From positions 28,396,001 through 28,460,000 of the forward strand of contig OZ004608.1 in the NCBI GenBank assembly GCA_963924565.1: 64,000 nucleotides of DNA, in the 5' to 3' direction. Every line of letters starts with the position of its first letter. Within the stretch, counting starts at the first letter, position 1. The notes beneath the pieces were generated by a model that was not told where the DNA came from, did no database searches, and saw only the letters and a list, made by a program, of their open reading frames with translations. Shown piece by piece: positions 23,801-62,893 of this stretch. The position numbers and the translations under genes were made by a program. Source of the stretch: Ascidiella aspersa (lineage: Eukaryota).

Positions 23801-26800
23801 AAGAAAACGATTTTTAAGACGCCACCACAACACCCACTGCAAACGCCACTTCAGCGAATCCCGTTTCGGGACTTTTAACAACGATCGGATCAGCGGCTGG
23901 AGGAGGGGTGATAGGAGGGGTTCTCGTTGTTGGAGCTGCTACGTTGGCGAAAAAAATTAAAGGCGGCGGAACTGGGTAGGTTTGCTTAACAACTTTAACG
24001 TTAGTAATTTTTTGTTTACGTAACATTATAACTTACTGTAGTCCCGGGAACGGTCGACGTTCTTAGATAATTTTAATGCATCCAACTATGCTTACCAACT
24101 TAATGACAGGGGCGGATCCAGGATTTGTTTTTTTGCTGGGCATCAATATTTTCGAAAATGCATCAAAACGTGACATCATAGCAAAAGCAACTGAATATTC
24201 TGCGCGGTATCTTTTAAACAAATTTGCCAACGTGCAGCGGAAATAAATTATATTGGAAAAACACGAAAATGACGAAGAGTTTGTGCATAGCGCTATAAAA
24301 CATTTTAATTTGTGGGAAACGTGCCGCATTGGGACACAAAAAGATCTCATTGTTCGATAAAAAAGTGTTTTTGGGTTGTTTCCATTGATCCAAGATCTAT
24401 ACGGTTGTCTACTAATCGCTTGAAAAATTTCCATAAAATGCATTCCATTTTCTTGGATTTCAAGTTAGAAAGGGGTCATTTACGATACTGGCCAAATAAC
24501 AGATACGTTATCGACCCTCGAAAGTTCAATAATGGGGATTTTAGTAATGTGACATTGGTTGCCAGGCGCCTTTAGCTATAAAGATTCGTTTAAAACGAGC
24601 GAAAACCCACCAGAAATAAATAACCTCTTGAACCCCCTGTATAACGGCTATTAAACAAAAGCTTAAAAGTAAAATAGATAAGAGATGATCCATGCAACTA
24701 TCGCTAGTTTTAATCGCAAGTTTCATGTATCGTCAACGGTTTTAGCTTATTTTATTTTCGTATTTGTACAGTCAATTGTTGATATTCAATCCATTCATAT
24801 TTTAAAGGGTGGAAAAAGTCAATGTGATTCAAAAACAGACCAAGACCCACACAAAAGGTAAGTCTAACTTAAAACCTACCAATATATATTGTCAATTAAA
24901 GTAAAGTACTGAACGACTATTTAAAATTCATAATATGATTCACACTAAGTTAACCGATAAGTATAGAAAATACATCAATATCTTATTTTTGCTGAAAACT
25001 TTATTTTTTTAGCATCCTAGTTTTAACTTTTTTATTTTGAGAAGTTTATAGAACAAATGGACCATGTGATTCTGATTTTGATCAATTCTAACAGGCGTAA
25101 CTTTAAAAGTACAAAGTTCATTTGTAAAATGTACAGTCAAGTAATATATATAGTTTTTTTTGTTTTAATTTAGATTTGATTAACGAACCGCAAAACGTTG
25201 TCGGAAAGCAGCGCAACGCACAGAAGAAACGACGAAGCCATAACACGAACGCAGTTGTACCGGTCACAAGGAAAAGTAAAACAGCAAAAAAAGGCCGACA
25301 CCAAAAGAAACAGATTCCAGCGAAATCGCAAACTGATAAAATGGTTATCGAAGTGAGCGACGACGAAGAGTTTGTTGAGGAAGAAGGAGAGGAACACGGA
25401 GAGGAAGAGGATGAAAATTTCGACGAGGATGAAATAGAAGAAGACGAGGAATATACCAATGAGGAAGAAGAACAAGATGTAGAAGAGAATAACAATGTCG
25501 AGAGTGGCGAGTATAGCGAAGAATATAACGAAGACGATGTTGATAGTGCGGGATTTTCGAATTATGAGGAAGAACAAGACAATGTGGACCCTTTTCCGCC
25601 TGTAATGACCACCAAATTTCAACAATCCAAGGCTCTTAGAAAAACGGCAAGGAAAAGGATAGCAAAGGCAACGCAAAGTAAAGGAAGTACAAATAAAAAT
25701 ACAAATAGACGAGTAAGTCCGATTCCTCGTATTCACAAAGGCAAACCTCCTAAAGTACAAAGTAATTCAAGACCGAAGGTTGTTGAGCGACAAACGAAAA
25801 AAAGCATGTGGGTTGAAAATGAAATCGAGGCAAAGAAAAGAACTGCAAATGCTCAAAGAAGAACTCCTCAGAAAAGCGAATTCCGCAACAGAAATAAACC
25901 AAGGGCAGCGACACGGGCTAAATCGGCAGGTTCACCGAAAAGGTTACACAATACTAAAATCATAAGCACTGCACAAACCACCGCAGAGCGAAAAGCTGCC
26001 AGGGAACTTCAACATAAAACAGATCTCATGTTGAACCAAGTAGAAGGTAAGCAAACGCAATGGCGAACAGTTAAATAAATTAGAAAAACTCATTTGCAGT
26101 GTGTAAAATTAAAGAAAGATACCTATGGTATAAAATAACGCCTATTGTGAGAAAATAAAATAAAGCTTAGAAGGAATGAACCAACGCAGGCCCGGCTAGA
26201 GGTGATAACCGGTGGAACAGATTCTAGTCCCCAAAATAATAAAATCAAATTTACACCGGTAACACAATACCCAGCGTTTAAATATGTGTAGGCCTACTGC
26301 GGTTTCGAGTAATATATTATATAGACCTATTCCTGTAGTAAATATATATAGGCAAATAGGCTACTCTGCGGTCATGCAATAAACACAGTAATCCACAAAC
26401 AAGGCCCTTTAAATTAACTTTGAGACTCACGTTATGCATCTTACTGCTCATTCTGAAAGCAAATGTGCATGTTTATTACATTGGCTCGAATTGAGATAAT
26501 CGTTTTTAAAGACTGATCTAGTTTTGCCATTTGGTGTGGTTTAGTTGTATAATCATGTGCAAAAAATATTTACCGGGAACTTACGCATAACTGTGCAATC
26601 TAAATTTTGACTTTTTAATTGCGTAGAAGTAACAAGAATGCAGAAACCACTTCCTGCTTTACCTGGAGAAGAAGATCAGTTCAATTCAGCAGACGACTCG
26701 TTCGACGATGATGAAAATGATGTGATGACAACAGAAGGTAGTCAAATACTTTTTAACGGTTTTCTTAAATGAAAACGTAACTAAAGCCTATAAAAGACAC

Positions 26801-29800
26801 ACATGCATATGGGTTTAATAACAATTGTGACCTAGCCCCTCGAAAGCTGCTTTTTGACCAACTATTACAGCTTCCGTATCAGTAGTAGGCCTACACCAAA
26901 AACCAATCGCAGACTCGCCGAATCTGTCGATCTATGACGCAACCAGAGCAGGCCAGCAAAACAACTAGACGGCAGTGAGGTTCAAACTCACGACTTCCGG
27001 CCATACCGGAACCGTCGCTCTACCTATTGATACAAAAGCCGTAATCGTTGGTTAAAAAGCAGCTTTCGAGGGCTAGATCAAAGTTGTTGTTAAACACTTA
27101 TGTGTGTGCGTCTTTAATGGATTGATACGGTACAGTTGATATCCCTTAGATTAAAGTTGCTTGTACTAACAGAATGTAGTAAGCATTGGCGTATTGTTGT
27201 TTCTCGACTCGCTTCTCTCTGAGCCAGTTGGTAAAGCGACGGTCCCGGTATGACTGGAGGTCGTGAGTTCAAACTTCAATGCCGTCTAGTCGTTTTTCTG
27301 GCCTACTCGGCTTTCATCATTGATCGACAGATTCGGCAAGTCTGCGATGGCTTTTCGGTGTACTAACTTAAGCCTACATATAAACAATGTGTAGCCTATT
27401 CTCTGTGATCAAGGCCTTTTGGTTGTTTTCTAGCCTGGCCTTGCTTGCACTGCAATCCTGATCAGGCTGACTGAATTAGGTAAGCCTCTCCAAGGGCATC
27501 CTGTGCTTTTAAAAAACGTTTATTGTTTTCGACGTGTCATAATTCTACTACTCAACCTTACCTTATAAATATTTTGCAGCCTCTTGCTGGAACGCTAATC
27601 ATGTTACATCGCGCCCGTCCTTTGCTCAATCGACTTCAAGCAATTTCTTAGACCACCGACCTTCAACTAGGCTAAACTTTGCCGACAGCCGAACTTTCTC
27701 CTCTAACAGCAGACCAGGTAAAACAAATGTTTAACACACAAATTAGCTTCCGCGCAATTATTTTTAAATGCTTTCAAAGGGCAGAAAGACCACAGTGTGT
27801 ACGTTCGATATAAGTGAGGAAAAATATCGTTGCCATTAGTTTTTCTCAAGCAGTCTTTTAAAGGCTTTGCTGTCCTATTATTGAATTGAAATGTTTGAGG
27901 TAATAATCAATAAATTAAACATTCTTGGTGGGTAAATTGGCAAATGAAATAGGTCGGGGGGGCGGATCCAGGGGACCACATGGCTATGCCCTTCCCAAAC
28001 AGTTTGCTTTGTTTATTTTAACTATGTAAATGCAAAAAAAAAATCGGGCTCCGTAAGAATTTCAATTATGTTTGTGCTATGCCTTTGTCTGTTTTGTTCA
28101 AATCGTTTTAGCCAAAAGGCATATGGGTCTTCTCGCACTATCGGTGAAATGTTTTAGTGACTTGAATAATTAAAAGGCGTGTTTGCTTGGCGCGAAGCAA
28201 ACATTTTTTTGTGTATATTTTCTATTACAATTAACACCTCTTCAATTTAAAACTTTAACACTACGGTTACTTCTTTTTGACGTCACGTTTAGATGTAAAT
28301 TCGTGACATCACCCCTAAACAAAAATCGTCCATACGCGCTAGCTAAACGTCACGTCTTTTTAGGGTTTTCATTTTGGTTAAATGAATGAAATAAATTTGA
28401 CTTTTAAATCTGTAACACCATCTTTATGTATTATTCGTGTAAGGTTTGGCTGGGATGCACAGGGTGTCTTCAAATTATTTGGCCCTGCCGAAAGAAGGAC
28501 GTAGGTCATATGGACAAAGCTACAACGAGAAACATTCGACAGGTGACGGTTAGTCAGCTGACATCCTGCCCTATTTATTTGCAGCACAGAGTTCACTCAA
28601 AGGCTTCCGTCATTAACACAATGTCGTGTCACTGTTATTGTGAGCTAAGGCGAATGTTAATTAGGTTATCATGCTCTTTACAGTTTTAGTCATGGTCGTA
28701 TAAATGTTTTGATTCTACGTAAATTTACCACGAATGATACAGGAGACGGGGTTTTGCTTTTAGACATCTTTGCACAACGCCGTCAGTTGTCAAAGTTGCA
28801 CTCTGGTTATGACGTTAGCTCGATGTCGTCATATCCGGCTTCGTCGGTCCACTCTTCGCTTGGGGCTGAAGGGAAGGATTACTTCATCGAATCAAACTTC
28901 GGTAAAAAAGATTCTGACTGGTGTTACGACTTTAACTAGTAATTCTAGAAAATTTCCTAGGCCTCCTGTAAAGTCGATGTGAGCTCTTATTTTCGGGCAT
29001 TAAATAACCTACCAAAGAGAGTTTATATTTAAGACCATCCACAACAAGAAAACCCAATGTACAGATGAATTGGTTGCAAGAGTAGAATATTACCACACCA
29101 CAAACAATAATGACACTTAGACACACACAATTATTTACAAACAACCGACAGACAGAGCATAATGACACTTAAAGTTTTACTCGCTAATTTCACAAGGCTA
29201 CACCCAGACGTCTCCTCTCTAGACGGTCAGCCGCTGGTAATATACGCTAAAACAAAACTCCTTCTCACGGGAAACGACGCGCTCCCGAAAACCCGAGGCC
29301 TGCCTTACAGGGCGGCCGTTTCGTGGCAAGATAACATTGGGCGGACCTTTTCGTGAGAAGTTAAACTGCGGCGGGAAACAAGCGATAATTGATCGTGAGA
29401 TTTGTAGCGTTGTTTAGAGACAGGAAATAACAGGTCCGGAGTCCAATTGAACAGGCGAACACCAGGGCGCACAAAAATATTACGTTATTATACATGTCCC
29501 GAAATGCGAAAACCTAATTCCTAGCCCTACATTTAAAAGCAAAGGCGCAAAATTAATAATGAATGTTAGAATTTACAGTCGGCGTAATTAGCAATAGCAA
29601 CCGGTGATAATTTTGTAGTGCTAATTAAGCACGTAACAACTGGTTTACCAGCTTATAACAAGCTGTAAAATAAATAAACAAGAATGTCAAATTAGTTTTA
29701 CGTGTTAGAAAATTTAAAAAAGTAGTGAAAAGCGTAAGCTTTTTTCACTTTATTTAACTTTTGCTGTTTGAAATAGTTAATTTATGCCTTTCGACCTCAT

Positions 29801-30214
29801 TTCAAATAGTGTTGAAATATTTTTCATTTATACTTTTATATAGGCCTACATTTGTACTTATTTAAGTTAAGCGGTTGCAAATGAAATCGAAAATAAATAA
29901 ATGATGTTGCCAAATTATTTTAAGTGTTGGAAAATTAAAAAGTATTCAAAACGTTGAAGAGCGTAAACTTTTTCACTACCTCTTAACTTTTGCTGCTTGA
30001 CGTAAATAATTTTCACCTTTTGACCTCATTCACGTTTAGTGTTGAAATATTTTTCATTCATACCTTTATATACATTGTGCTCTTGTAAGTTAAATGGTTG
30101 CGAATAAGATTGAAAAGTAACTAACCGCTTTATTCTTTTGCAGAACATTTAAACGAACCCGAATACGACAGCGTACCCAGGGAAGACGTTAACGAATCAA
30201 GCTCGTGGAACTAA
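20827..30214 (+). CDS. Type I transmembrane C-type lectin-domain protein with Thr/Ser stalk and long disordered cytoplasmic tail (~761 aa)
   Basis: Phase-consistent exons 20827-21055, 22173-22418, 22722-22790, 23037-23105, 23294-23428, 23819-23975, 24808-24857, 25174-26046, 26627-26737, 27580-27717, 28764-28901, 30144-30214 (TAA); sum 2286 nt. Signal peptide (VCCLLAFVLCV), CTLD (AEKSC..LGAQLA, YIGL, WRPGEPN, ELCV, WIDISC, YVCQ), TM LLTTIGSAAGGGVIGGVLVVGAATLA followed by KKIK. AATAAA at 30493. The CTLD call is strong; joining of the downstream exons is inferred from phase only. Confidence 0.78.
21820..21985. mobile_element. Partial MITE with GAGTCGGACTC subterminal repeats
   Basis: Clustered GGAGTC/GGACTC motifs ending in GACTCCGCAACCCTG; similar end to 35492-35853. 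Left boundary approximate. Confidence 0.5.
22630..23262 (+). repeat. Near-identical 315-bp tandem duplication containing a 69-nt coding exon
   Basis: Two units offset by 315 nt (TCTTATAG at 22636 and 22951); both contain the exon VTTALSSETKAITTQTSNTKTFE with intact AG/GT. Confidence 0.95.
26788..27120. repeat. ~95-bp inverted-repeat arms enclosing a reverse SINE fragment
   Basis: 26788-26885 is the imperfect reverse complement of 27024-27120 (core CCTCGAAAGCTGCTTTTT / AAAAAGCAGCTTTCGAGG); the spacer 26892-27023 is the reverse complement of 27231-27362. Confidence 0.85.
27215..27362 (+). mobile_element. tRNA-derived SINE-like element
   Basis: Pol III A-box-like GAGCCAGTTGGTAAAGC and B-box-like GTGAGTTCAAAC at tRNA-like spacing, followed by a non-tRNA body; a second diverged copy lies on the - strand at 26892-27023. 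Confidence 0.6.
29702..30120 (+). repeat. Diverged ~200-bp tandem duplication in last lectin intron
   Basis: 29702-29895 and 29924-30120 share collinear blocks (AGCGTAA, TTTTGCTG, GACCTCATT, TAGTGTTGAAATATTTTTCATT, AAGTTAA..GGTTGC). Confidence 0.8.
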
Positions 30215-47907: not shown

Positions 47908-50111
47908 ATGACGACATCGCGGCATCTTTGGATGATAAGCGTCGCTTTGGTACTCTCAGTAACTTTCCAAATGAGCGGTAAGTAACTTAAACGTTGTAAG
48001 TAAAGCGTATAATTGTATTGTCCGCGAATTTGTTTTTTGTTTGAAAGTTAACTATATCGAAAATTAATTTGTTCATTCTACGTTACATACTACACTATTC
48101 CTTTTAGCTAAAATGCGTTAAGTCTTAAATTTACAGTTTTGCGTATTACTTCAAACCGCCAAACAAACCTTGCGGTAATTAATTGCAATATTATTTCCAT
48201 AAACATGAAAAACAAAATTATTTGAAGAATGAAATAAAGAGCTTATTTTGTTGGTTTGATGCAAAAGTTTTTTTTCTAAACTCAGACTTGATGGACTGTT
48301 AATAAGATGTTACCTTTTTATATTGTTGCGGGCGTTTTTCATTTCCTTCATTGATTTCGGCATGCATTGTATGCAATAGCGTTCGGTGTCATTCGCCCTG
48401 AATAAGGCAAATTGTGTGTATGTTGTCGAAACGTTGGAGAACAAAAAATACCAGTGGGGACACTTTGATTATAAAGATGCCTTGTAGCAACAGTTTATAG
48501 AATATTACAATACCAACACTGGCAAAATGAAACGTTTTTGCCACTTTGCCTAAATTTTAACTCTTTGTTTATTTTACAATAGATGCCGAACACGGCGGAC
48601 AACAATCACCGACGCCAAGCAGGCCTGTCCCAACTGGAATGATGGAAAGAATGACAACAACCGATTACGTTGCAATGTCGGGCGATAGGACAACAGCAAC
48701 ACATCATATGAGCGGCGATACGACAACATCAGTACACATGACGTACCCTACACACCCAACTACTCATACCGGTCCACAGCCAAACTACACAAGCCCAACA
48801 CCAACTCAACCAGGTCCATCACCAACAGGACCTAGCCCCAGTCCAACTGGTCCAGCACCTACTGATGAGCCAGGTACTAGATTTGCTAAAATATTCTTAG
48901 AGTTTTTATACCAAATATAACACCATTCTTTATTTCAAATCAAAATTTTATTTAAAATCAACCAAAAAATTGTCTAATTACAAATCCCCTTTTTTCGTAC
49001 GTGCACAGGTGGCATGCAGACGTACGCGTGTCAGATGGCAGCTTATCGGGAAGCTATGCAAGAGTACTTCAAGGTGGTGAGGATGTATTCCAAAATTAAC
49101 GGTGGATGCGGATGTGGAATGGGTGGACATGGAGACGGCATTGGTGGAAATGGTGGAGGATACGGTGGAAATGATGGCGGAATGGGCGGAAACAATGGTG
49201 GAATGGGTGGAAATAATGGTGGAATGGGTGGTTGCGGATGTGGAATGGGTGGGCACGGTGGCGGAATGGGTGGAAACGGTGGTGGCATGGGTGGAAACGG
49301 TGGCGGAATGGGTGGAAACGGTGGTGGAATGGGTGGAAACGGTGGCGGAATGGGTGGAAATGGAGGCGGAATGGGTGGAAATGGTGGTGGAATGGGTGGA
49401 AACGGTGGCATGGGTGGACACGGTTGCGGACAGGGTGGACACGGCGGTGGAATGGGTGGAAACGGTGGCATGGGTGGAAATGGTGGCGGTATGGGTGGAT
49501 ACGGTGGCGGAAACGGTGGAAATGGTGGAGGAAACGGTGGGTGTGGCTGCGGACAACATGGTGGTGGCATGGGTGGAAATGGTGGTGGAATGGGCGGAAA
49601 TGGTGGTGGCATGGGTGGAAATGGTGGTGGAATGGGTGGAAATGGTGGTGGCATGGGTGGAAATGGCGGAGGAATGGGTGGAAATGGTGGCGGAAACGGT
49701 GGAAATGGTGCTGGCAACGGTGGTGGACATGGAGGCGGAATGGGGGGAAACGGCGGCGGAATGGGTGGACACGGAGGCGGAATGGGTGGAAATGGTGGAG
49801 GAATGGGTGGACATGGTGGCGGTATGGGTGGAAATGGTGGCGGTATGGGTGGATACGGTGGCGGAAACGGTGGAAATGGTGGCGGAAACGGTGGGTGTGG
49901 CTGCGGACGTCATGGTGGTGGCATGGGTGGAAATGGTGGTGGCATGGGTGGAAATGGTGGTGGAATGGGTGGAAATGGTGGTGGCATGGGTGGAAATGGT
50001 GGTGGAATGGGTGGAAATGGTGGTGGCATGGGTGGAAATGGCGGAGGAATGGGTGGAAATGGTGGCGGAAACGGTGGAAATGATGCTGGCATGGGTGGAT
50101 TTTGGTGGTAA
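47908..50111 (+). CDS. Secreted Gly/Met/Asn-rich repeat protein (~487 aa), probable extracellular structural protein
   Basis: Exons 47908-47977 (signal peptide MTTSRHLWMISVALVLSVTFQMS, GTAAGT donor), 48583-48873 (Thr/Pro-rich), 49009-50111 (short helical segment, then GGGMGGN heptads with GCGCG motifs, ending GGFWW*). All phase 1; 1464 nt in frame. Confidence 0.85.
49100..50105 (+). repeat. Coding 21-nt tandem repeat (GGN GGN ATG GGT GGA AAY GGN) with ~354-nt higher-order duplication
   Basis: Variation falls mostly at third codon positions of the Gly frame; GTGTGGCTGCGGAC recurs at 49541 and 49895. Confidence 0.95.
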
Positions 50112-51467: not shown

Positions 51468-54400
51468 TTAACGGTAAAAAATAAGAAAGGTCGATTCGTA
51501 GAGAGCTTTCTTGGCGCACCAAACGTCCGTAGCATTCTGTGAATCGTTCCAACAGAGCGAGGCAAAATCACCGCAGTAGTTGGCATTCGAGTTGATGCCG
51601 GTCGATCCAATGCAAGCGTGTTGAGGATGACTGAGTTTGTTCACTTTAACACCGGGACACAACGCGAACAAGTTTCCGCTGATGTCCACCACTCGAAACT
51701 GCAATAAAGCCCGGTAAAAAATCATTACATTCAGTACCAAAAACTTTCAAACCTGCTGTAAAAATCTTATCGGCTGCTGTACTAGAAATTCGAATAATTT
51801 ATTAAGAGTAGTTTTTTAGATTCGTCACATACGTCATAAAAGTTTGGCAAAGTTAATTATTATAATATATTAAAATTTGAACATACACTTTTTAAGATGA
51901 GTAAACTAACCAGGCTTACGTTTGTGAAATATGAAAAAAAAACTACTTTTACTGCCATATCTGGGTAGTATTTAACTACTTGAATAGACTGAAAACACAT
52001 CCATATATTCTTGCATTTTTTATAATTTAAAATATATTTGTTGCTTTTGTGGCGTATAGACAGATAGGTCAACAAAACTACATTTAGAATAATGTCGCTG
52101 TAGAAAAGAAACAACACTTTACTTTCAAAACTAAAAAATGTAGTAAAACTAAGTATCTGTGTGAGAATTGATCACAGCGGTTTACTTATACCTGGATATA
52201 ACATGGTTCCACTTTGTCCTGCACGTTTTTTCCCAACTGCCAAACAAACAATGAAGAGTTACCGTGATCCATGTGGACTTCCGGACTTGGTCCGTTGTCC
52301 CCTGGAAACGTGTAACTCCCGGTCAATTTGTAATGGTCGCGAAAAAGTCGGAATAGATTTCCGCCGTAGAGTTTCAGAAAACCGTCGCGAGTGTAGTACC
52401 GCAGGTGGGCGCTGTTCTGCCACATGCTAACGTCGACGTCGTTCGGAACTTGCCAGATCATCACGTTTTCGGCTGTGATACCTGAATACCCTAAAATAAA
52501 ATAAAAGGGTAAAGCATTTAGTAGGTTTAAACCTATCAACCAACACCAAGTTTGTAGAGCTGGCAAATGTATTTTTTTTTATTCCAACGTTTCGACGTCC
52601 TATACAGGTCGTCTTCATCAGGGTAAATAACACTGAATGCGACCATGAACATCAAGGTAAATAACACTGAATGCGACTAGTACAGTGCACGATAAACAAA
52701 GGAAAAAAGAAAAAGGAAAAAAAGAATGGAACGCAAGCAACGCAAACACCGTTGTTATTAACCAACACGTTTGCAAGTCAGCTTGAATAATTAAGAAAAT
52801 AGTTGTTGGCTGAAATTTACCTGTACCGGTATATTTAATTGTTATTATTTTACAAAAATCTGCTTTGCTGTTCAAGGCTTTCCAGTCAGCATGCCTCAAT
52901 CAAGCCCTTTTAAACGGCTGACGACTTTCAATTTTTAAACTTTGTTCTAAAGCAAGCAAGCAAGTACGCTTATATAGGTGTATTTGATTTTAAGTTACTT
53001 ATTTAATTTAATTTACGACAAAAACACCATAAAATGAATTTTTAAACGCGGTAGGCATTTTTATAGCAATTGTAGTCGACATAGCCTTCAGCTGAATGAC
53101 GTGATGAATAAATGGTTGGGCACGCCTGTCTTAAAAAAGAAGTTTAATCCGAATAAATTATTTACTGCACTACAGGGCGTTAAAAACATTTTAAATGTAT
53201 TGCTAATATTTCAAAAGTTTCAAATCGTTATTTTTAATTTAAATCGTTACACTGCAGGGATCCAGTTATCGCTTATGACTTTACCGGAATTTTTGTAGTC
53301 GTCATTCGTCGCAGACGCAACCTTTCCCAACGTAATCGTATTCGACCAGGCGGCGCCACCTCGCGGATAATTGTTGCCCTGATCGCTGGACCATCTATCG
53401 CCAGTCGTACAGCGTCCAGTAGAAGTCGGGTTGTTGTCGTGGACCGATGCGACCAGAGTCCAGCCGCCTCCGTCCGTGGTCATGTCGCAATAGGTCTGGT
53501 ATGACGCGCCGTCCGGGTCCTTTAAGCTGTAGATGCCGCTGCGCAGCTCTTCAATACTCGGAAAGTACCTTACGTCCTTACAAGACGTCAAATCACCTAT
53601 GAGGAGCACAGTAATACTGATTTAGTTGTGGAACAGGCGTTAGCCTAGTTTTTTTAAGTAGTTTTTTGAGTGTGAGTATATATCCATTAGTGAAATTAGT
53701 GTAGACGTAGAATGGCACTTACTTCGTAAAAGATCAAGCTTTCCTCGTATATTCTGTGAATTAAAAAAAATCAGGGGTTTCCAAGTGATATGCTATAAGA
53801 AAATGCTTATACATTAATTACATTTGAAAAACGTTGAAAGTAGATTTACCATAAGCGATGTACTAATTTTCATATTCTACCAGATTTATCTTTATACGTC
53901 AAATGCAACGTTACCTTTTATAAAATTATACAAATTTATACGGAAATTATATAGTTACACTTTTGGTACTACTAGCCGATAAAAACTTACAAAGTAGTAC
54001 AGTACTCCAATAGTTCCGTAGGATATAAGACTGGCCAAAATGGCGATTATTCTTGAAACTGAACAACCCTTTTTGTTAGATTCTTTGACAAAAATGCATC
54101 AGTCAAAAATTTAGGACAAATTGATACAAGCTTAGTAGGCTACTTTTGCAGGCCATTTTTTATTTATGTTTGGACTGTTTATGTTTATTTGTTATCAATT
54201 TTTTTTAATTTACTTAAATTCGCTTTTCATTTTTTAGAACTTTGTGATGTTTTCTGGGAAATTTGTTTTTAATTAGTAAGTTACTGGTTTTACAAAAAAT
54301 GTAAGTAAGTTAACAACCTTAGAAATAATTTTTTAAATCAATGTTATGCAAGGGCTATAACAACTTGTTGCAAAGTTTAGTTTTCAGGTTTTTCATACCT

Positions 54401-57400
54401 TTTTCACCTTCTTCAACCTCGGCGCTATTTCTTCGTGACGATTGGGCTGTAAAATATTTTCGAAGATGTAAAAAATGTAACTACAACATACAGGTATACA
54501 ACCACTGTTATTTTTCAACACATCATTTCCAAAGAATTAAAGAAGTAGTGTTTTGTACAGTAGTATAAAGTAAAGGAACAGTTCACACTATTAAAGACTG
54601 AAAACAAGTAAAAAATAGTCTGTTAGTCCAAAGTTTTGTAAAAAGTGCCACATGGTTCTTTACAAATGCAATATAGCTCTGCCAAAACGCATTAAATAGA
54701 CATCATTATATTTTGCAAATCTGTCACTAACATCTGCTTTACGCTGTACAAACAGCAAACACTGTGAGTAAATATTAAATAAAAAGCACATAAGACTCAC
54801 AAAACTCAATTTCTGGTTTCGCTTGCTTGTTCTTCTCTTCGTCACCTGAACAAAAATGTTCGCTAATAGTTCATTTTTTTTCTGTTTATTTTCAAGCAAA
54901 AAACAGAATTAGTTCAAATAATACCACCTTCCTTTTTGGTTTTCACGTCCTTTGCAAACTTGCTAAATGCACCTGAAATATCTAGAATAAAAATAAAATT
55001 AGATAAAATGAACTCCAATATATATATATATATATATATGTTTAGTTTATAGCAGGCCTTATTTATTTTATTTGGTTTACTAAAACTTTTTTGACTATAT
55101 CGACCATTCGTTATACTTAAGAGACCGTATATTCTAATCATAATAGCCTACAATCCGAAACGATCCACTTGTTTGTCGATTTTCTGTTTAGGCACTATAT
55201 TTTTGCATAGGGTCGACTGCTTATAATACATATGGTTATCTAGATTCTAGACAAAATGTTATAAAACTTATGTTCTCTAACCTGGGTCGCCGCTTTGCAA
55301 TTCCTTCACCAAAGTTGTGGAAGCTTTCACCACTTTAACAACTTTAAAGGCTGAAATGTAAATAATTAAAGTTTAGGCCTACGCATAAAAACGTTTGCTT
55401 GCTAATGAATTGTTTTTTTGTAATTTGTTGTGCGAAACAGTGCTTGTTCTAACATATTGTGTTTGTAAGTACAGATTTTTTGTCGTATTCTAAAGTTTTT
55501 CACTGAGACTATTCGTCATGGCTACTACGCATGAATTAGCCGGAGCACTGCACAGGCCTCTCTAATTCGTAGAAATATATATAAGGCATACCTCTAGAAA
55601 AATTCCTTCAAGTAAAAATCGATTCAGTTTTTCGCTTAGCACAAACATTTATTTTTACCACTGTAGGCTCGATCGGTCAAAGCATATCGGATTTAAATCA
55701 GGGCAATTGCAGCACACTTAACATTTTCTAGTTTTTTAACCGCCAACAAAATGTTTTGAGGCACATGCGGAATGCTTCTGTTTTGATTATTTGGTTTATT
55801 TTTAGACCAATTCGAACAGTAAAAAGTACGATTTTGTACACTATGAAAATTAGACTGTAGTTTTGGTCAAATATGCTTAGTTATTGTTGTTTTATTTAAT
55901 GTCACACCATGACATAATCTTAAGAATTATATTACAGTATAATGCCAACAAGCTATGAAGTATAATGCCAACAAGCTATGAATACGATCATGTGTTTCCG
56001 CCAAATATTCTAAAATTTACACCGCATTGGAATTTTCATTTACCCGACTCTTTGCTTGGAAGTTTTTCCGAAAATTGCTTTAAGCGTCGAACCTTTGGTG
56101 AAACTGCAAAATAAAATTAATTTTATTCTCATTTTAATTTATTAGGCTACCAAGGAAATGCTGGTAAAGCATACAATTCCTACACCAAAATTTATCGATG
56201 ATTAGGACAAACGTAATTTAGTTAACGTGACATAACGAGTAATGATGAATTGAGCAAATGTCTTACCTGGTTTAGTTGCAGCATCTTTTTCTTCCGTAAC
56301 ACCGGTGGTACCAGCATCATCCATGCCTTTGGAATCTACACCAATACAATAAAAACTGCTATAATGCGTATTTAAAATGTCTGTACAGCATAAGCCGGTG
56401 TTTATAGTTATACTGTAGAATTAAATCACAAATTAAAATCTTTCCACGAAGAACGATTTTTTTCGGGTATATACGAGTTTCTAGCCTTGCAATATATCAC
56501 GCAGGACCAATACCGCTTAACTCTCAAAAATCAAAATGAAAATGTATTGTAATTATTTAAAATATCTGTTTCAGTTCATACCTTGAGATTAGTTTATATA
56601 GTTTTATTTTTTACCTTCTTTTTTTGTTTTAACTTCTTTAGCAAACTTGCTGAATGCGCCTGATAAATCTAAAAAACAATATTCATTAAGGTTAGCTATT
56701 CGTAACATTTAAAACACAAATCGGACATCAAGCAGCAAAAAAAGATTTTAAGCAGCAAACATTAGGCCCGAATAGCCCATATAAGGATGGAGTCTGTATT
56801 ATAGCTTTTATATAATCGATCTATTCTGTTCGTACAAGTACATTTTCCGTAAACAAGGAGTCGCTACAGGCGCTTACTTTTATAATTTTAGTAGTTTCCG
56901 GTAGTAATTGCTTTCAGATTAGGCTATTTATTTTTCAAGGGAGTTAGCTTCAGCCAAGAGCCTCAATAAATTACCTTAATTGACAGTGCACGATTTAAAA
57001 TGAATTATGCGAAATTACGTTTTTCTTAAACAGAAATTGCTACTTAAAATGAATATTATTTAATATTTTATTTTTCCAACCTGGGTCACCACTCTTCAGT
57101 TCCTTCACCAAAGTTGTTGAAGCTTTAACCACTTGAACAACCTTAAAGGCTGCAATGTAAATAAAACAATTTGAAATGCATTTTACTAGAGCGCTTAACA
57201 AACTATGTTCCAGACTGGATTTTAGTTGACAATTCTTGCAAATTTGAATAAGCACAGTATGTCCGCTCTCACGCCATTTTAAGATCAATTATGTTACAAG
57301 TAAACATAATCGTTTTAACCTGTGTCCTTAATAATTGTGGCCTGAGAATTAAAACCACACAACAAAAACATAGGATGCCAACTTTACCCGACTCTTTGCT

Positions 57401-57675
57401 TGGAAGTTTTTCCGGAAATTGTTTGAAGCGTCCCACTTTATGTAAAACAAAACAAAACAAAACGTGAAAAAGGAAAAATTGGCAATCAAAAAATGATTTA
57501 TGTTTCAGTCTCCTAACAAATCCTATCTCAGCGTACCGGTATAGCCAACTTGACACGAGGGAAATATAATAGGCGAATTAAATGTACCAAAATGTGATTT
57601 ACTGTTTATATAATTTTTACCTGCTTTCTTTGCAGCATTTGTATTTTGCGTGACATCTGTAGTGTCGGCATTCAT
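51468..57675 (-). CDS. Type II membrane-anchored intelectin-like (fibrinogen-related/X-type lectin) protein, ~496 aa
   Basis: Exons (-): 57675-57621, 57435-57388, 57149-57081, 56668-56615, 56335-56267, 56103-56044, 55350-55282, 54981-54928 (or 54925), 54446-54399, 54082-53991 (TM IIAILASLISYGTIGVLYYF), 53753-53723, 53596-53285, 52490-52192, 51698-51468; 1491 nt in frame. Intelectin motifs YQTYCDMTTDGGGWTLVASVHDN, CTTGDRWSSDQGN, ATNDDYKN, IWQVPN, DNGP, ALCPG, CGDF, LIFYR*. The intelectin domain is high confidence; the 5' exon chain is inferred from splice sites and phase. Confidence 0.82.
52578..52630 (-). ncRNA. Minimal hammerhead-ribozyme-like motif (Penelope-like element pLTR remnant)
   Basis: The minus strand reads CC-CUGAUGA-A-GACG-A-CCU-GUAU-AGG-A-CGUC-GAAAC-GUU-GG-AAUAAA: catalytic boxes, a well-formed stem II, palindromic AACGUU stem III remnant and a trailing poly(A) signal. 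Stem I is weak. An adjacent direct repeat (GGTAAATAACACTGAATGCGAC x2) spans 52616-52677. Confidence 0.6.
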
Positions 57676-59750
57676 TTGTTTGTAGTTTTACTAAAATATG
57701 TTTTTAGTTTAAATGTATACCTTATTTTAATATATGTCTTAAATTTAACATCAACGAGAAAACAGCAGTGTTTTTGAGAAAATTTGATTGTCAAACTATA
57801 TACTCTTATTTGAACATATTTAATTTAATTTACTGTGTTTAAATGAAAAGCGATTAACAGATTATTATTAAATATAGGAAAGCGGCTATGTTCACGGATA
57901 ATGACGCAATTTACTTCACACGAATACCTTTTTGAAATCTACCAACCTGCACATATAACTTACTTCTTTTTTAATAAAGTTTTCTACATGGTTATCAAAT
58001 CGCCTATCGTATTAATTATACCCCATGTAGTATTTTTTATTTAAATTTTTTTCGTCTATGTAAAAATCCTTTTCATTTGAAATAACACAGCTAAGAAAAT
58101 CCTGCCCAACAGTAGTATTATTCAGACATCACTCGAAATAAATAAAAATATCTAAACCTGTTAAAGGCGACAGCGATTTATTTAAAAGTTTCAAAAAAAC
58201 CCTGAAAGCTACAAACTTTGTGACAACGATCTGTTACTTGAAAATAAAAAAATAAACTTACTAAAGGTATAAATATTCTAAAGGTCCTTGAAATTTTATA
58301 CCATTTATCGACGTTTCTCAAAATCAAAACAAAATCATTATGATTGAGGTTTTAAAGTCGCTATAAGAACTTTTTCGTCATCAATGAATCAATTTTCTGA
58401 CGTTGTAATCTAGGGCATATTTCAGTCAAACATATCACTCGACCGGAAATACAAATGACCCGCCAATAACGTTATGTATCATCATGACGTTTTTTTGTTA
58501 ATAACAATCTTCACCTAGAGAAATAAATTTGTCTCGCTTTCACTATTTTTAAGCATTTTCTGATTCTGGGATTTAAGAAATGCCGAGCTTGCAGGTCGAG
58601 TAAATGATATCTTCAGGGTTCTTACAAAACGCGAAATAATACCGTTTATAAATTGAAGATATTAAACGTTGGTTAACGTAATTTATTGTTACGTTTTTAA
58701 ACGTGGTGTTTTTTCTATGGATTTCGTTCAATGACTTGACAATTCACTAAAACTGTTGTGATTGCAAGAAGGCCATTATAGGTAAAAACGTTTTATATTT
58801 TTTATCTCGGTTTCGTGATTAATATCGCCTAATGGGCAAAAAAATTATATAACTTATAAACATATACCTGGATACAAAAAGGAAGATTGCTAAAAAAAAT
58901 TAAACATAAAAAGTTGGTTGTTTTATGTTTGTTTCAATAAATTACTTTGATGCCTTATTTTGATTCCATCACCATCTATCTATACTTCTACGTTTCATTT
59001 ATTTCCACAATAAATTATCAAAATACGCATATTTAATATTGCCAAGATATGACCCGTCCGGTTATAAACAAATATTGAACTTTCTTTCACCGTGAAACTT
59101 AACAGTCTTAAAAAATCTTACAAATAACAAGATTTTAAAAACGAAACATATAGGAACCGTTTTATTATCTTAAAATATAAAAGTGATTGCCTTAAGCGCT
59201 TTTATAAACCATTTAACGCCCAAATCTAATGCATGGGAGAAACAACAGAAATCATATGAAGTATTACTAAAAAGCAAATATTTACAAAGTGTTACGAAAA
59301 ACTCTGTTGTGAGCAAATAAACTTTAGAGAGTTGTAACTTGTAAATAGTAACCACAACTCATTTAAATCTTATTTTGGTTTGCTTTCCTAAGCACCCTAG
59401 AAATTTTGAATCTCTTATTTTACATTAAATTATACACCGAGCAAGAATCATTTTTATTAGAAAAACACACAAAGAATGACTATTCATACAAGTAGCCAAC
59501 TTATAATTATATATGCCAGAGTGTTCAATTACACTCCGTTTTGGAGTTCAAAACTCCAAAAATGCGAAATCAAAGGTTGCCGAAAACGTGTAAAGCTACT
59601 AATTGTACGTAATCATTAAAATATTAGCCAGGACACATATTACGGTACGTATAACTTTATGGAAACGTTAGGAAGAAAGTATATAGCTATGCATATAGGT
59701 AATTAGATTTAATACCATTATAATATAAAATAAATTCGTTAAAGATATAA

Positions 59751-61175
59751 CTATTTTAGGCTTTGATGATTTCCCTGGATAGACTTGTTCAAAAGCGCTT
59801 GCCGCTCAGTCGAAATATCCTCAATTTTTTTTAATTTTTCCTCAGCATCCAATCGCTTGTTGTTTGGCCGAAGAAAACAAGACAAAACAAGCATGAGTAG
59901 AAAGCAGGTGGTTTGGAAAAGAAAAATTCCCGTCACCGAGGTCGTTTCGAAAAACAGCCTTCCCAGCTCTGAAGTCACGAGAGATTCAAGAAAATTAATA
60001 CCTGAAAATAAACTCGCGACGAAGGCCTCTTTCATTGGATAAGTAACCTGGGTAACTGCTTCCAAGACCGGAATCTGAATTATTCGAACCGAAAATCCAA
60101 TTATAAAGTTGCAAGCATAAATACAAGCAATGCTGTCCAAGTAATAACCAAGCAAGACGATTAAAGTAAACAAGATCAAAGCCAAGGCTCCTACTCTTAT
60201 TTGAAGCACAGGTCGGTGGAATTTGTTTACTAACCAGCCACTAAACGCAGCTCCGGGTAAGCCCCCAACAGCTAAAACTACCACTCCCCAACTGCCTATG
60301 ACGTCAGGATTTGCGTCGCTGCCGCTTTTGGCAAACATCTTACGAAATATTTGCGACATCATAAGGTACTGAGCCGGGTTGCTGTGGTCTGCTAGACCTC
60401 CAATGGTTGTAACAAGCAAAAAGCGCCAATTTGAAAATAGGGCCTTTAGCTCGCCCCAGTAACTGACAGATTCAATCGAACCTTTGTCAATTTCGTCTTC
60501 ATTTTGTCGGAGCTGAACCAAGGTCGGTGGGGTCGGCGGTCGATCAGTTAAGTAAAATATCATGAGAAGGAGAATAGCGAAAAGTAGAACAAGCGGTGTG
60601 CCGTAAATAATATAGGCGTATTTTCTATCGACGACCAGCCATTGGCCATCTGCTCGCCTGCTGTGATTTCCTGCATACGGCTGCTCCATGACTTGACTAG
60701 GCACGATGCATCCTGATATTACACCAATCGATCTGCCAAAAAATATCAGGGCGTATGCTGTTCCGAGTTCCTTGCTCGCAAACCAATAAACTGCAAACGC
60801 CGGTATTAACGAGAATGAAAGAGAGTTTCTAACACCCTGTATAAACTGCCCCAAGACTAGTAGAGGGAACAAGGTTCTACGAGAAAACGCTGCGAGCATG
60901 AAAGTATATGAAGTGATAAGCAGAGATGTACAGGCTATAATTAGGGCCCGTATTTTGACAAGACCAACGTACACCAACCACGCGACAAGCAAGGTAACTG
61001 CAACACTGCTCAGTCGATTTCCTATCGAAACCCAGTCCACTGCAACATACGACACTTTAAAATAATCCACATAGATGTTGCTGACTTGCGTTGAAAGCGT
61101 GTTGACATACGTTATCATAAAGTCCATTGTAGCAAGAGCTACAAGAAAAAGCCATCTACGTTTGTAAAGCTTCAT
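59751..61175 (-). CDS. Intronless FLVCR/SLC49-like major facilitator superfamily transporter (~474 aa from first ATG)
   Basis: Single long ORF with about 12 hydrophobic segments; family-typical KLYKRRW, VDWVS, GQ, WF..KE..TA, PPTPPT, E.TYP motifs. The ORF is open upstream to 61232 (TTG), but the first ATG is at 61175, matching the ATG position of the paralog. Confidence 0.88.
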   Translation of the reverse strand: MKLYKRRWLFLVALATMDFMITYVNTLSTQVSNIYVDYFKVSYVAVDWVSIGNRLSSVAVTLLVAWLVYVGLVKIRALIIACTSLLITSYTFMLAAFSRRTLFPLLVLGQFIQGVRNSLSFSLIPAFAVYWFASKELGTAYALIFFGRSIGVISGCIVPSQVMEQPYAGNHSRRADGQWLVVDRKYAYIIYGTPLVLLFAILLLMIFYLTDRPPTPPTLVQLRQNEDEIDKGSIESVSYWGELKALFSNWRFLLVTTIGGLADHSNPAQYLMMSQIFRKMFAKSGSDANPDVIGSWGVVVLAVGGLPGAAFSGWLVNKFHRPVLQIRVGALALILFTLIVLLGYYLDSIACIYACNFIIGFSVRIIQIPVLEAVTQVTYPMKEAFVASLFSGINFLESLVTSELGRLFFETTSVTGIFLFQTTCFLLMLVLSCFLRPNNKRLDAEEKLKKIEDISTERQALLNKSIQGNHQSLK

Positions 61176-62893
61176 AGAATCAACAAATTGCAATCTTGTA
61201 GAATTGACTTGCAGATTTCTCGCTTTGTGCAAACTTTCTTTTGATCTATTATGCTCTACAGTTTTTTTGTTTGTTTTTCTTCCAGGGCGCTAGTAAGAAT
61301 ATAAACAACACGGCGATTGACTAATAAACACTAGCAAAGACATAACATCCTTATATAATGTGTAGCATAAAGGCTCCATCAACCTTTTTTCTTGGCGCCA
61401 ACCTTTATTGTTTACAAAATGTTGCCATATCCAGAACAAACAACGAAGGCATATTGAATAAATATAGGTGATTTAAATAGGTGGGTTATAGCTGTTTAAT
61501 TTATAGTATCTGAATTACATTTGGTATTTTTAGATTTTCATAATCAGTGCTCTGCAACCGGTATGTTGCGAGACCATGCTAGGAGTGCAGTGGTGTAACC
61601 GGTACTTTGTTTTGCGTGTTTTTCGGAATATACTGTCCAAACGTCTGTGTGAATATTTATAGATACGTAAAACTAGTAATTTTGGCCGTCTGCAATCAAA
61701 CTTTTCAAACAGTGTTACGTTTAATTGCTAAAATATTCTGTTAGTCAAAAACAAACTCAACTTTCGACCAAACGGTAGCCTACAACAAATGCTAAAAATT
61801 GTTCACCTTTAATCAAAAGCGAAAGGCTGAAACATTATACCTACGCTCAATACCTGTTTAATATATTCTTGATTGGTGTTCGGGAATACAATTTAAACAT
61901 AAATTTACAAACAGTGTTTTTACGTTCAATTTATAAATGTCATTTAAAATCCATCGTGGGATTAGCCGAGGCAAGCCCTAGACTTTGAGTGGCCAAAATA
62001 TTTTTAGAATGACTAAATAAAACTTAAACAAATACACAAGGCGTCAAAACCTTGGGCACACTAAATCATAAAGGTTTTATGCAATGAGGCAACGATTATA
62101 TTCGGCAAAATATATATATTCAGTTCAAAATAAAGATATACAGAGTTGCTGTTGGGGTCAGACTTAGTAAAAGGTCGAAATGAAGGATTCAAATTTAATC
62201 GTTTTATACGTTGACGACTTTTCACAATTCAAAGAAAATATTGAATTCTGTGATGTAGCGTAAATAATTTTAATTCTAATTCTAAATATTGAGAAATTTT
62301 TAACATGACCAACTACATTGCATGAATTATATTTTCATTTGAGAGGCTGTCGTTAATGTTTTTTATTTGACGTCCTTATGTAAACCGCAATATTTTTAAA
62401 TTGTATTTTATATTAAAAACAATCGATATACTCCGCAGCATCGTCTACAATTTGTTTTGCAATGCTTTTTTAGAAAGTTTAGTTCAGTGACCTGAACAGA
62501 TAACAAAACAATTCGAATACTGTACAAATCGAAATGACTAAAACTAGGTCTTGACTTGTACAAATGACAACCTAAGGTAGCAGTACGGTACTTGAAGTGT
62601 TGTTTTATCACAACGACTTGACGACGATAAATGCCTATAGTCATTGAACAATCCAAATCGCTAAAGTGTTAGAGCTAGAATACACATTTAGACAATCTTC
62701 ATAATATCGGTAGGGAACATTACAAGCTACTGAGTCTCTTCCATGTTGATTATTGGAATGTGCGAAGCAATTGAAATAAATTGACCCTAATTAAGCACAT
62801 AAAGTGTCAAAAATAACTGAAAGTTCAGGAAATAACTGAACTTCCGTCTCTGAGATGAGTTGTGATAAATTGGCTGAATGCTTTTTAGGTGTC

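What the first reader, a model, noticed from the sequence alone, without database searches (positions are those of the whole stretch)
51468..57675. Intelectin recast as a type II membrane receptor with a ~185-aa cytoplasmic tail
Seen: instead of a signal peptide, the intelectin exons are preceded in phase by a 31-nt linker exon, a TM exon (ESNKKGCSVSR-IIAILASLISYGTIGVLYYF, basic residues on the N-side) and nine small hydrophilic exons starting at ATG 57675. The TM exon and most of the small exons are absent from the ORF track. Established: characterised intelectins are secreted oligomeric lectins; type II anchoring is known for the distinct FReD protein FIBCD1. Inference: a cell-surface, possibly signalling, X-type lectin. 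RRNS (PKA-type site) and a juxtamembrane Cys (possible palmitoylation) lie next to the TM.
Basis: partly seen in the sequence, partly recalled or inferred. Interest (0 to 1): 0.75.

Follow-up and report, generated by a model that had tools for sequence, protein, structure and literature searches.

The report
Membrane-anchored intelectin with repeated cytoplasmic tail
This looks like a real gene for a sugar-binding immune-type protein (intelectin) tied to the cell membrane by an inner anchor and carrying a long, repeated tail of unknown kind inside the cell, but no RNA yet shows it is made as one piece, and similar anchored forms are already predicted in other sea squirts.

Summary
On the minus strand, 15 exons (57675..51468) all have AG/GT borders and join in phase to 1536 nt, 511 codons plus stop. 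There are ten small tail exons, not nine.

The tail is a duplicated four-exon cassette under purifying selection (pN 0.059, pS 0.443). A sister gene 20 kb away has the same build. The hydrophobic exon has no ATG and an in-frame TGA just upstream, so it cannot start a protein.

Transcript proof is missing. The one RNA run, about 6% read, gave almost no depth and no joints.

Membrane-anchored intelectin models are not unique. 7 of 95 short representatives are such models, from Ciona, Styela, Clavelina and Branchiostoma. This scan also noted another one elsewhere in this genome (not checked by me). I found no paper describing them.

What is particular here is the tail. It is lysine-, serine- and threonine-rich, has no tyrosine, matches no Pfam family, and occurs only in these two genes. 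Signalling is unsupported. Verdict: new variant of a known kind, moderate interest.

The parts
57621..57675 (-). Exon 1: ATG at 57675, peptide MNADTTDVTQNTNAAKKA plus 1 nt. An in-frame TAA lies 5 codons upstream, and an AG lies 15 nt upstream of the ATG (a possible trans-splice acceptor; inference).
   Evidence: 50% identical over 16 aa to exon 5
57388..57435 (-).
   Evidence: 86% to exon 6; 57457-57383 aligns to 56116-56039
57081..57149 (-). Exon 3 (module B): FKVVQVVKASTTLVKELKSGDP, phase 1-1.
   Evidence: (91% to exon 7)
56615..56668 (-). Exon 4 (module C): LSGAFSKFAKEVKTKKE, phase 1-1.
   Evidence: (88% to exon 8)
56267..56335 (-). Exon 5: SKGMDDAGTTGVTEEKDAATKP, phase 1-1. It is a copy of exon 1 and holds an in-frame ATG at 56324, a possible start of a shorter isoform.
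56044..56103 (-). Exon 6 (module A, second copy): SPKVRRLKQFSEKLPSKES, phase 1-1.
55282..55350 (-). Exon 7 (module B, second copy): FKVVKVVKASTTLVKELQSGDP, phase 1-1.
54928..54981 (-). Exon 8 (module C, second copy): ISGAFSKFAKDVKTKKE, phase 1-1.
54801..54845 (-). Exon 9: acidic spacer DEEKNKQAKPEIEF, phase 1-1. It ends in F like the spacer exons of the sister gene.
54399..54446 (-). Exon 10: QSSRRNSAEVEEGEK (holds RRNS), phase 1-1. The exon at this position in the sister gene is not alike in sequence.
53991..54082 (-). Exon 11: juxtamembrane SNKKGCSVSR plus the 20-residue hydrophobic core IIAILASLISYGTIGVLYYF (mean Kyte-Doolittle 1.88). It has no ATG, an in-frame TGA lies 4 codons upstream of its acceptor, and it runs phase 1 in, 0 out.
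   Evidence: (only two such exons in the genome)
53723..53753 (-). Exon 12: 31-nt linker NIRGKLDLLR, phase 0 in, 1 out. It is identical in the sister gene, and the intron after it is 121 of 126 identical.
53285..53596 (-). Exon 13: first intelectin exon (..SCKDV..YCDMTTDGGGWTLVASVHDNN..). It matches Pfam Fibrinogen_C at 25 bits (cut-off 22).
52192..52490 (-). Exon 14: second intelectin exon. It aligns to XEEL residues 116-209 (E 3.4e-13).
51468..51698 (-). Exon 15: last intelectin exon, ending ..LIFYR and TAA (51470-51468). It aligns to XEEL 214-289 and to human intelectin-1.

Best explanation
One gene encodes a single-pass type II membrane protein of about 511 residues. The N-terminal cytoplasmic part has about 201 residues. 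It consists of a start exon, two copies of a three-exon cassette (A: RFKQFxEKLPSKE; B: FKVVxVVKASTTLVKEL; C: SGAFSKFAKEVKTKKE) separated by a copy of the start exon, an acidic spacer, and a basic juxtamembrane stretch with one conserved Cys. A 20-residue hydrophobic segment acts as an uncleaved signal-anchor. The complete intelectin (X-type lectin) domain is then held about 15 residues outside the membrane. Shown: the exon chain, its phases, the selection on the tail exons, the sister gene with the same build, and the intelectin identity of the last three exons. Inferred: that all exons are joined in one mRNA, the N-in/C-out orientation (from the disulfide-rich ectodomain with three N-glycosylation sequons and from the length of the N-terminal part), surface display, and glycan binding. 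The tail is rich in Lys, Ser and Thr and lacks Tyr, so ITAM-, ITIM- or YxxPhi-type signalling is unlikely. Its most likely role is a regulated scaffold or a membrane- or cytoskeleton-associated segment that positions or clusters the lectin (a guess, low confidence). The gene probably arose when a cytoplasmic-tail-plus-anchor exon set replaced the signal-peptide exon in front of the old phase-1 intron. The tail cassette then duplicated in tandem, with the former first exon now used as an internal exon.
For: The exon chain has 15 of 15 AG/GT borders and consistent phases, 1536 nt in all. The hydrophobic exon has no ATG and an in-frame TGA lies upstream. In the internal duplication only exons plus splice flanks still align. 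Over 54 codons there are 15.5 synonymous differences on 35 sites against 7.5 non-synonymous on 127 sites (pS 0.443, pN 0.059, ratio about 0.09), so both copies are kept as protein. The sister gene at G000:C2, about 28468229-28473313, has 14 AG/GT exons with the same order and phases. All exon length differences are multiples of 3 (69/60, 45/63, 48/78, 92/101 nt), and the linker exon is identical. The upstream neighbour is a separate single-ORF, 493-aa, many-helix protein ending at 59751, so the tail exons do not belong to it. The last three exons match XEEL and human intelectin-1 and Pfam Fibrinogen_C. The analogous build of N-terminal tail, internal hydrophobic segment and intelectin domain occurs in RefSeq models of Ciona, Styela, Clavelina and Branchiostoma: 7 of 95 representatives of 800 aa or less among the best 150. 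At least one other intelectin gene of this genome (L003) has an ordinary ATG-led signal-peptide-like piece 231 nt upstream, so secreted forms coexist.
Against: There is no transcript evidence. The RNA run X3, with about 6 in 100 of the run read, laid 7 reads, all only partly. 27 of 30 bins had no depth, no tail exon was covered and there were no joints. No protein of this species, and nothing above 69% identity, is in the two protein collections, so no independent gene model exists. Flanking charges do not decide orientation: by my count, about net 0 on the N side and +1 on the C side. All tail exons are phase 1-1, so skipped-exon or shorter isoforms are equally in frame, for example a start at ATG 56324. 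The sister gene has an in-frame ATG 4 codons upstream of its anchor exon (read), which would allow a short-tailed form there. The amphipathic character of the tail exons is weak: the best helical moments were reached by 1-20% of shuffles in exons 1-8. The joined product was never run through a topology or structure predictor, because that step was left out by rule.
Confidence: 0.68

Rival explanations
1. The gene is real, but the main product is shorter. Transcription or SL trans-splicing begins at the acceptor in front of exon 5 (ATG 56324), or some cassette exons are skipped. This would give a tail of about 120 residues or less. The upstream cassette would be an alternative 5' part rather than a constitutive one.
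For: Exon 5 is a copy of the start exon and keeps an in-frame ATG 11 nt behind its acceptor. The sister gene starts its open chain with an ATG 11 nt behind an acceptor. All tail exons are phase 1-1.
Against: Exons 2-4 are as well kept as exons 6-8 (pN 0.059 against pS 0.443). This would not be expected if one cassette were unused. Exons 1-4 have no stop or terminal exon of their own and must be spliced onward.
Confidence: 0.15
2. There are two transcription units. The hydrophilic exons, with or without the hydrophobic exon, make a small cytoplasmic or tail-anchored protein. Reading through the donor at 53991 gives 11 more codons and a stop. The intelectin exons would belong to another mRNA or be unexpressed.
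For: No RNA joint was seen. Read-through after the hydrophobic exon ends quickly in the window gene (read).
Against: The intelectin exons then have no start codon or signal sequence. Exon 13 begins in phase 1, and the linker exon that feeds it has no ATG. The read-through stop is not kept in the sister gene, where the frame stays open (111-aa open frame). Both genes keep the phase chain through the anchor, an identical 31-nt linker and the intelectin exons. The intelectin exons are under purifying selection between the two genes (ratios 0.31 and 0.36).
Confidence: 0.1
3. The protein is made as modelled, but the hydrophobic segment serves only for entry into the ER. The ectodomain is then released by cleavage or shedding, so the working form is a soluble intelectin like the characterised ones.
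For: Characterised intelectins are secreted (PMC12800186, passages). The stalk between the membrane and the domain is short and basic (NIRGKLDLLR) and is identical in both genes, which could mark a processing site (inference).
Against: A 20-residue core about 200 residues from the N-terminus is not a signal-peptide arrangement. A conserved, selected tail of about 200 residues would be pointless for a mere export signal.
Confidence: 0.07

Closest known systems
Characterised intelectins (human ITLN1, PDB 4WMQ/4WMY/6USC; Xenopus XEEL, 4WMO)
   Same: The last three exons align over the whole intelectin fold. Exon 14 aligns to XEEL 116-209 and exon 15 to XEEL 214-289 and ITLN1 chain 232-306. The CDMTTDGGGWTLVASVH motif and the C-terminal ..LIFYR are present. 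The aromatic-box position W288 is kept and Y297 is W (alignment; role of W288 and Y297 from passages of PMC12800186).
   Different: There is no N-terminal signal peptide. Instead there are about 201 hydrophilic residues and an internal anchor. At the calcium/ligand site, the positions aligned to N260, E262 and E274 are H, Q and N (the roles of these three residues are recalled from Wesener et al. 2015, which is not held). H263 is kept. The same P-Q-H/Y change is seen in other tunicate intelectins.
Predicted membrane-anchored intelectin-like proteins of tunicates and amphioxus: Ciona intestinalis XP_078486252.1, XP_078487815.1, XP_018672990.1; Styela clava XP_039251235.1; Clavelina lepadiformis XP_076814314.1, XP_076822543.1; Branchiostoma floridae XP_035698623.1
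   Same: They share the order of N-terminal hydrophilic part, one internal hydrophobic segment and an intelectin domain. None is characterised in any paper I could find.
   Different: Their tails are 13-61 residues long and unrelated in sequence. None of the 205 fetched proteins matches tail modules A, B or C below E 0.4. Several have extra ectodomain parts (a cysteine-rich stretch in Clavelina whose cluster members UniRef names 'WSC domain-containing protein'; a collagen-like stalk in Branchiostoma). On the exon-13 tree the window gene and its sister do not group with them, and the anchored state needs at least 5 changes (97 columns, poorly resolved).
[quoted passage not shown]
   Same: It has a type II orientation with a C-terminal domain of the fibrinogen-related superfamily that binds small acetylated or glycan ligands. 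This is an analogy of design.
   Different: FIBCD1 has a canonical full FReD. Here Pfam Fibrinogen_C matches only profile positions 15-51 of 221, as is usual for intelectins. The tails are unrelated. The gene is not a member of that family.
Type II C-type lectin receptors (ASGPR, DC-SIGN, Dectin-1 type; recalled)
   Same: They share the design of an N-terminal cytoplasmic tail, a signal-anchor and a C-terminal lectin domain.
   Different: The lectin fold is different. Those tails work through tyrosine, di-leucine or ITAM-like motifs. This tail has no Tyr, Trp, His or Cys in the 181 whole-codon residues of exons 1-10.

Membership tests
Intelectin / X-type lectin | Sequence similarity over the whole intelectin fold to solved intelectins | tested here: met
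   Exons 14 and 15 match XEEL (E 3.4e-13 and 1e-08) and human intelectin-1 (1.8e-09 and 3e-04). Exon 13 finds 1244 proteins at E<=0.001, and the named ones are intelectins.
Intelectin / X-type lectin | Short fibrinogen-related segment at the start of the domain | tested here: met
   Pfam PF00147 scores 25 bits (cut-off 22) on residues 18-53 of exon 13.
Intelectin / X-type lectin | Calcium/ligand-site residues of ITLN1 (N260, E262, H263, E274 recalled; W288 and Y297 from PMC12800186) | tested here: inconclusive
   By the alignment these positions read H, Q, H, N, W and W. Two carboxylates are replaced by amides, and the position aligned to E274 lies beside a gap. Other tunicate intelectins share the Q. 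Binding cannot be judged from sequence.
Intelectin / X-type lectin | Secreted through an N-terminal cleavable signal peptide (as in all characterised members) | tested here: not met
   There is no signal-peptide exon. The only hydrophobic stretch begins about 201 residues into the model.
Type II single-pass membrane protein | One internal hydrophobic segment of about 20 residues and no N-terminal signal peptide | tested here: met
   The core is 20 residues with mean KD 1.88. Exons 1-10 have mean KD of +0.10 or lower. The joined product was not run through a predictor, because that step was left out by rule.
Type II single-pass membrane protein | N-terminus in the cytosol, C-terminal domain outside | not testable with these tools
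   This is inferred from 9 Cys and 3 N-x-S/T sequons in the C-terminal part against none in exons 1-10 (my reading). Flanking charges are not decisive.
Type II single-pass membrane protein | Tail, anchor and ectodomain on one mRNA | tested here: inconclusive
   The RNA run X3 gave no depth on the tail exons and no joints, with about 6% of the run read. Comparative evidence favours one mRNA.
Tyrosine-motif (ITAM/ITIM/hemITAM) lectin receptors | YxxL/I-type motif in the cytoplasmic tail | tested here: not met
   There is no Tyr among the 181 whole-codon residues of exons 1-10, nor in the juxtamembrane SNKKGCSVSR.

The most novel reading that the evidence does not exclude
The A-B-C exon cassette is a new, lineage-restricted cytoplasmic module. 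It links a membrane-bound intelectin to the cell interior without tyrosine motifs, for example through Ser/Thr phosphorylation, lipid or cytoskeleton binding and a palmitoylated juxtamembrane Cys. Together with the other anchored forms predicted in tunicates and amphioxus, this would mean that invertebrate chordates use intelectins as true cell-surface pattern-recognition or uptake receptors, a role not known for this lectin family.
Probability: 0.25. Interest if true: 0.65.

Novelty: new variant of a known kind. Interest (0 to 1): 0.45.

Why it matters
Intelectins are treated in the papers I saw as secreted lectins (PMC12800186). Some papers also mention a lipid-raft-associated lactoferrin-receptor role for mammalian intelectin-1 (PMC7873212, passages). 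A gene-encoded signal-anchor with a selected cytoplasmic tail of about 200 residues would make this an integral membrane receptor. It would add to a so far undescribed set of anchored intelectins in tunicates and amphioxus. It is also a clean example of exon-cassette evolution: phase 1-1 exons, a tandem cassette duplication, and a former first exon reused as an internal exon. The importance is limited because expression, topology and ligand are all untested, and because anchoring itself is already common in database models.

Tried and rejected
RNA evidence. One RNA-seq run of the same species label (X3) and one DNA-like run (X1) were laid on 52100-57950. X3 gave 7 partly fitting reads. About two lay on the 5' part of exon 13 and the rest on a high-copy repeat in the intron at 52492-52883. 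There were no joints, so this says nothing either way.

Search for the species' own annotated protein or spliced fragments. The representative search with exon 13 and the word search with exon 13 (34 hits at E<=1e-20 among 69 candidates, best identity 65%) found nothing from this species.

Homology of the tail.
- Pfam on the 7 tail, anchor and sister-gene tail exons of 20 aa or more gave no credible family. The only row is a sub-threshold match on the anchor exon, 15.2 bits against a cut-off of 25.
- Per-exon profiles of modules A, B and C found only their own four copies each in the 308.6-Mb genome. The first-look filter there is coarse.
- The same profiles found nothing below E 0.4 in the 205 fetched proteins.
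- The big collections could not be searched for the tail, because single exons are 15-22 aa and the joined tail was not to be used.

Amphipathic-helix idea for the tail. Support is weak: only exons 4 and 6 reach the 1-5% shuffle level.

PKA-site idea. RRNS is not conserved in the sister gene.

Tree. I asked whether anchored intelectins form one clade. They do not on 97 columns (at least 5 changes), but 31 of 59 inner branches are unresolved. P0134 and other rows covering fewer than 85 query positions were dropped before the tree.

Candidates rejected after inspection among hydrophobic-segment hits. P0053 is a fish model whose hydrophobic stretch looks like the ordinary signal peptide behind an upstream-extended start. 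P0123 is a metagenome protein with a lipoprotein-like signal. P0070 is a partial primate 'hypothetical protein'. P0150 was not inspected.

Papers. Wesener et al. 2015 is not held. Yan et al. 2013, on the intelectin family in tunicates, was seen only as a reference and not read, so it may describe domain architectures. Supplements were not opened, and those of PMC6321704 or of tunicate genome papers might list anchored intelectins.
Full report
WHAT IS THERE. I read the minus strand from 57900 to 51300 and checked an exon chain by script, exon by exon, without joining. Fifteen exons run from ATG 57675 to TAA 51470-51468. All 14 acceptors are AG and all 14 donors GT. Each exon is open in the frame dictated by the phase carried over. 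The lengths sum to 1536 nt, which is 511 codons plus stop.

Exons 2-10 are all phase 1-1. Exon 11 (54082-53991) enters in phase 1 and leaves in phase 0. The 31-nt exon 12 restores phase 1 for the first intelectin exon (53596-53285). I find ten, the extra one being 57435-57388. About 201 residues then precede the 20-residue hydrophobic core (IIAILASLISYGTIGVLYYF, mean Kyte-Doolittle 1.88).

THE TAIL IS A DUPLICATED, SELECTED EXON CASSETTE. Exon peptides searched back against the window show that exons 1-4 are repeated as exons 5-8, with 50, 86, 91 and 88% identity. At DNA level only the exons plus 15-20 nt of splice flanks still align (57457-57383/56116-56039, 57164-57068/55365-55268, 56681-56613/54995-54926). 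The introns no longer align.

Over the 54 comparable codons there are 15.5 synonymous differences on 35 sites and 7.5 non-synonymous on 127 sites (pS 0.443, pN 0.059). Both copies are therefore kept as protein in this frame. Exon 5 is a copy of the start exon and still has its ATG (56324) 11 nt behind its acceptor. The former first exon now also works as an internal exon, or as an alternative start.

The tail has 34 Lys, 19 Glu, 18 Ser, 16 Val, 15 Ala and 14 Thr among 181 whole-codon residues, and no Tyr, Trp, His or Cys. Pfam finds nothing in the tail exons of 20 aa or more. Helical amphipathicity is only weakly above shuffles.

WHY THE TAIL BELONGS TO THE INTELECTIN.
- The hydrophobic exon has no ATG, and an in-frame TGA lies four codons upstream of its acceptor. 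No exon between it and exon 5 has an ATG. The intelectin part therefore has no start or targeting signal of its own.
- The upstream neighbour is a separate single-ORF, 493-aa, many-helix protein ending at 59751. The tail exons are not its 3' end.
- A sister gene lies 20 kb away (G000:C2, about 28468229-28473313, locus L033). Its first intelectin exon is 86% identical. Its anchor exon is the only other match to the anchor exon in the 308.6-Mb genome.
- Read by eye and checked by script, the sister gene has 14 AG/GT exons in the order A-B-C-spacer, A-B-C-spacer, one unrelated basic exon, anchor, an identical 31-nt linker, and three intelectin exons, with the same phases.
- Its tail is diverged to saturation at silent sites (pS 0.75, pN 0.33 over the three ungapped A and C exon pairs summed). 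Yet every length difference is a multiple of three.
- The juxtamembrane Cys sits at the same distance from the core in both genes. RRNS is not kept.
- The stretch from the linker exon to the end of the first intelectin exon, with the intron between them, is 91.8% identical over 489 nt. That intron is 121 of 126 identical, which suggests gene conversion or a constrained element.

WHAT IS MISSING. No transcript links the exons. Of three runs listed, the one RNA run (X3, raw reads, about 6 in 100 read) laid 7 reads, all only partly fitting. 27 of 30 bins had no depth, nothing lay on the tail exons and there were no joints. About two reads lie on the 5' part of exon 13 and run on into unlike sequence. 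That would fit splicing but shows nothing.

X1 contigs carry three variants in tail or anchor exons. By my hand reading they are GAA>GAG (55301), AAA>AAG (56328) and AAC>AAG, N>K (54075). These are too few to weigh.

Neither protein collection holds a protein of this species for this gene. The joined steps (topology prediction, fold prediction, and search with the whole product or the whole tail) were left out.

THE LECTIN DOMAIN. Exon 13 matches Pfam Fibrinogen_C over a short N-terminal segment. Exons 14 and 15 align to XEEL and to human intelectin-1.

Chain position x of 4WMQ corresponds to residue x+7. I inferred this offset because N260, E262, H263, E274, W288 and Y297 then fall on the right letters. 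With it, the window protein has H, Q, H, N, W and W at these places. The role of W288 and Y297 is stated in passages of PMC12800186. The roles of the other four are recalled from Wesener et al. 2015, which is not held.

The Glu-to-Gln change (P-Q-H/Y) is shared with the sister gene and with Clavelina, Styela and Ciona proteins. It is a tunicate variant of the site, and its sugar specificity cannot be read from sequence. By my reading, the ectodomain has three N-x-S/T sequons and nine Cys, and exons 1-10 have none.

HOW COMMON IS THE BUILD. Exon 13 finds 1244 proteins at E<=0.001 among 1.84 billion representatives. Of the best 150, 95 are 800 aa or shorter. A hydropathy scan, inspection and names give 7 credible models with an N-terminal hydrophilic part, an internal anchor and an intelectin domain:
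- Ciona intestinalis: XP_078486252.1, XP_078487815.1, XP_018672990.1
- Styela clava: XP_039251235.1
- Clavelina lepadiformis: XP_076814314.1 (its cluster members are named 'WSC domain-containing protein' by UniRef) and XP_076822543.1
- Branchiostoma floridae: XP_035698623.1 (with a collagen-like stalk)

Their tails are 13-61 residues long and unrelated to this one. On a tree of the exon-13 region (69 rows, 97 columns, 31 of 59 inner branches unresolved) the window gene and its sister are each other's nearest rows. They do not join the other anchored groups, and the anchored state needs at least 5 changes.

The nearest named relatives are tunicate proteins, so the genome is probably a tunicate's (inference). 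This scan noted before, on another piece of the same genome, a membrane-anchored intelectin with a tyrosine-bearing tail (s1-788743). I did not check that locus. At least one other intelectin gene here (L003) has an ordinary signal-peptide-like piece upstream.

LITERATURE. Seven full-text searches listed no paper that describes a transmembrane or type II intelectin. I read passages only.
- PMC6321704 describes placozoan intelectins as secreted, and cites Yan et al. 2013 for 22 tunicate intelectins.
- PMC3048546 and PMC9953650 add nothing on anchoring.
- PMC8185196 describes calcium and diol recognition.
- PMC7873212 names intelectin-1 as the intestinal lactoferrin receptor, and its reference list cites a paper titled as a lipid-raft-associated brush-border protein.
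- PMC12800186 states that intelectins are secreted.
- PMC11174207 was of no use.
Yan et al. 2013 and all supplements were not seen and could bear on the novelty claim.

VERDICT. The reading 'type II membrane intelectin' is the best explanation (about 0.68), but it rests on gene structure, selection and a sister gene, not on RNA. 'Signalling receptor' is unsupported. Anchoring as such is already widespread in database models though, as far as I could find, undescribed in print. The long repeated tyrosine-free tail is the new element.

Noticed in passing
G000:C2:28468229-28473313 (locus L033 4229-9313, minus strand), 20 kb beyond the window's end: This is the sister gene with the same tail/anchor/linker/intelectin build (14 exons, about 508 aa from an ATG 11 nt behind an acceptor). 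It has an in-frame ATG 4 codons upstream of its anchor exon that the window gene lacks.
   Followed up: yes
window 53280-53768 against L033 6165-6653: The linker exon, the 126-nt intron after it (121 of 126 identical) and the first intelectin exon are 91.8% identical between the two genes, while all other introns no longer align. This suggests a gene-conversion tract or a constrained intron.
   Followed up: partly
window 49116-50099: A 21-bp minisatellite with 47.6 copies at 79% matches gives long spurious ORFs in five frames just downstream of the gene's 3' end.
   Followed up: partly
window 52492-52883 (intron between exons 13 and 14): A high-copy repeat: Logan word depth is 8848 against about 58 around it, and the few RNA reads that were laid fall here.
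   Followed up: no
window 59751-61232, minus strand: A single uninterrupted 493-aa ORF with many hydrophobic helices that looks like a transporter. It is the upstream neighbour, 2.1 kb from exon 1. No family search was run.
   Followed up: no
proteins P0001-P0003, P0005: The best-scoring matches to the first intelectin exon are giant proteins (1847-4522 aa) with 7-15 intelectin-like stretches. They come from metagenome contigs and from a transcriptome of the amoebozoan Phalansterium solitarium.
   Followed up: no
G000:C2:28.61-29.19 Mb (loci L018-L023, L025-L027, L029-L030): A large cluster of further intelectin-like exons that match only positions about 29-88 of exon 13. This suggests a differently split gene structure. 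It starts about 150 kb beyond the window, and several copies have a TAG inside.
   Followed up: no
window 23819-30214: Another first-reader note on this window reports a C-type lectin receptor with a long modular cytoplasmic tail (one search's companion listing). No tail exon of the intelectin gene matches there.
   Followed up: partly
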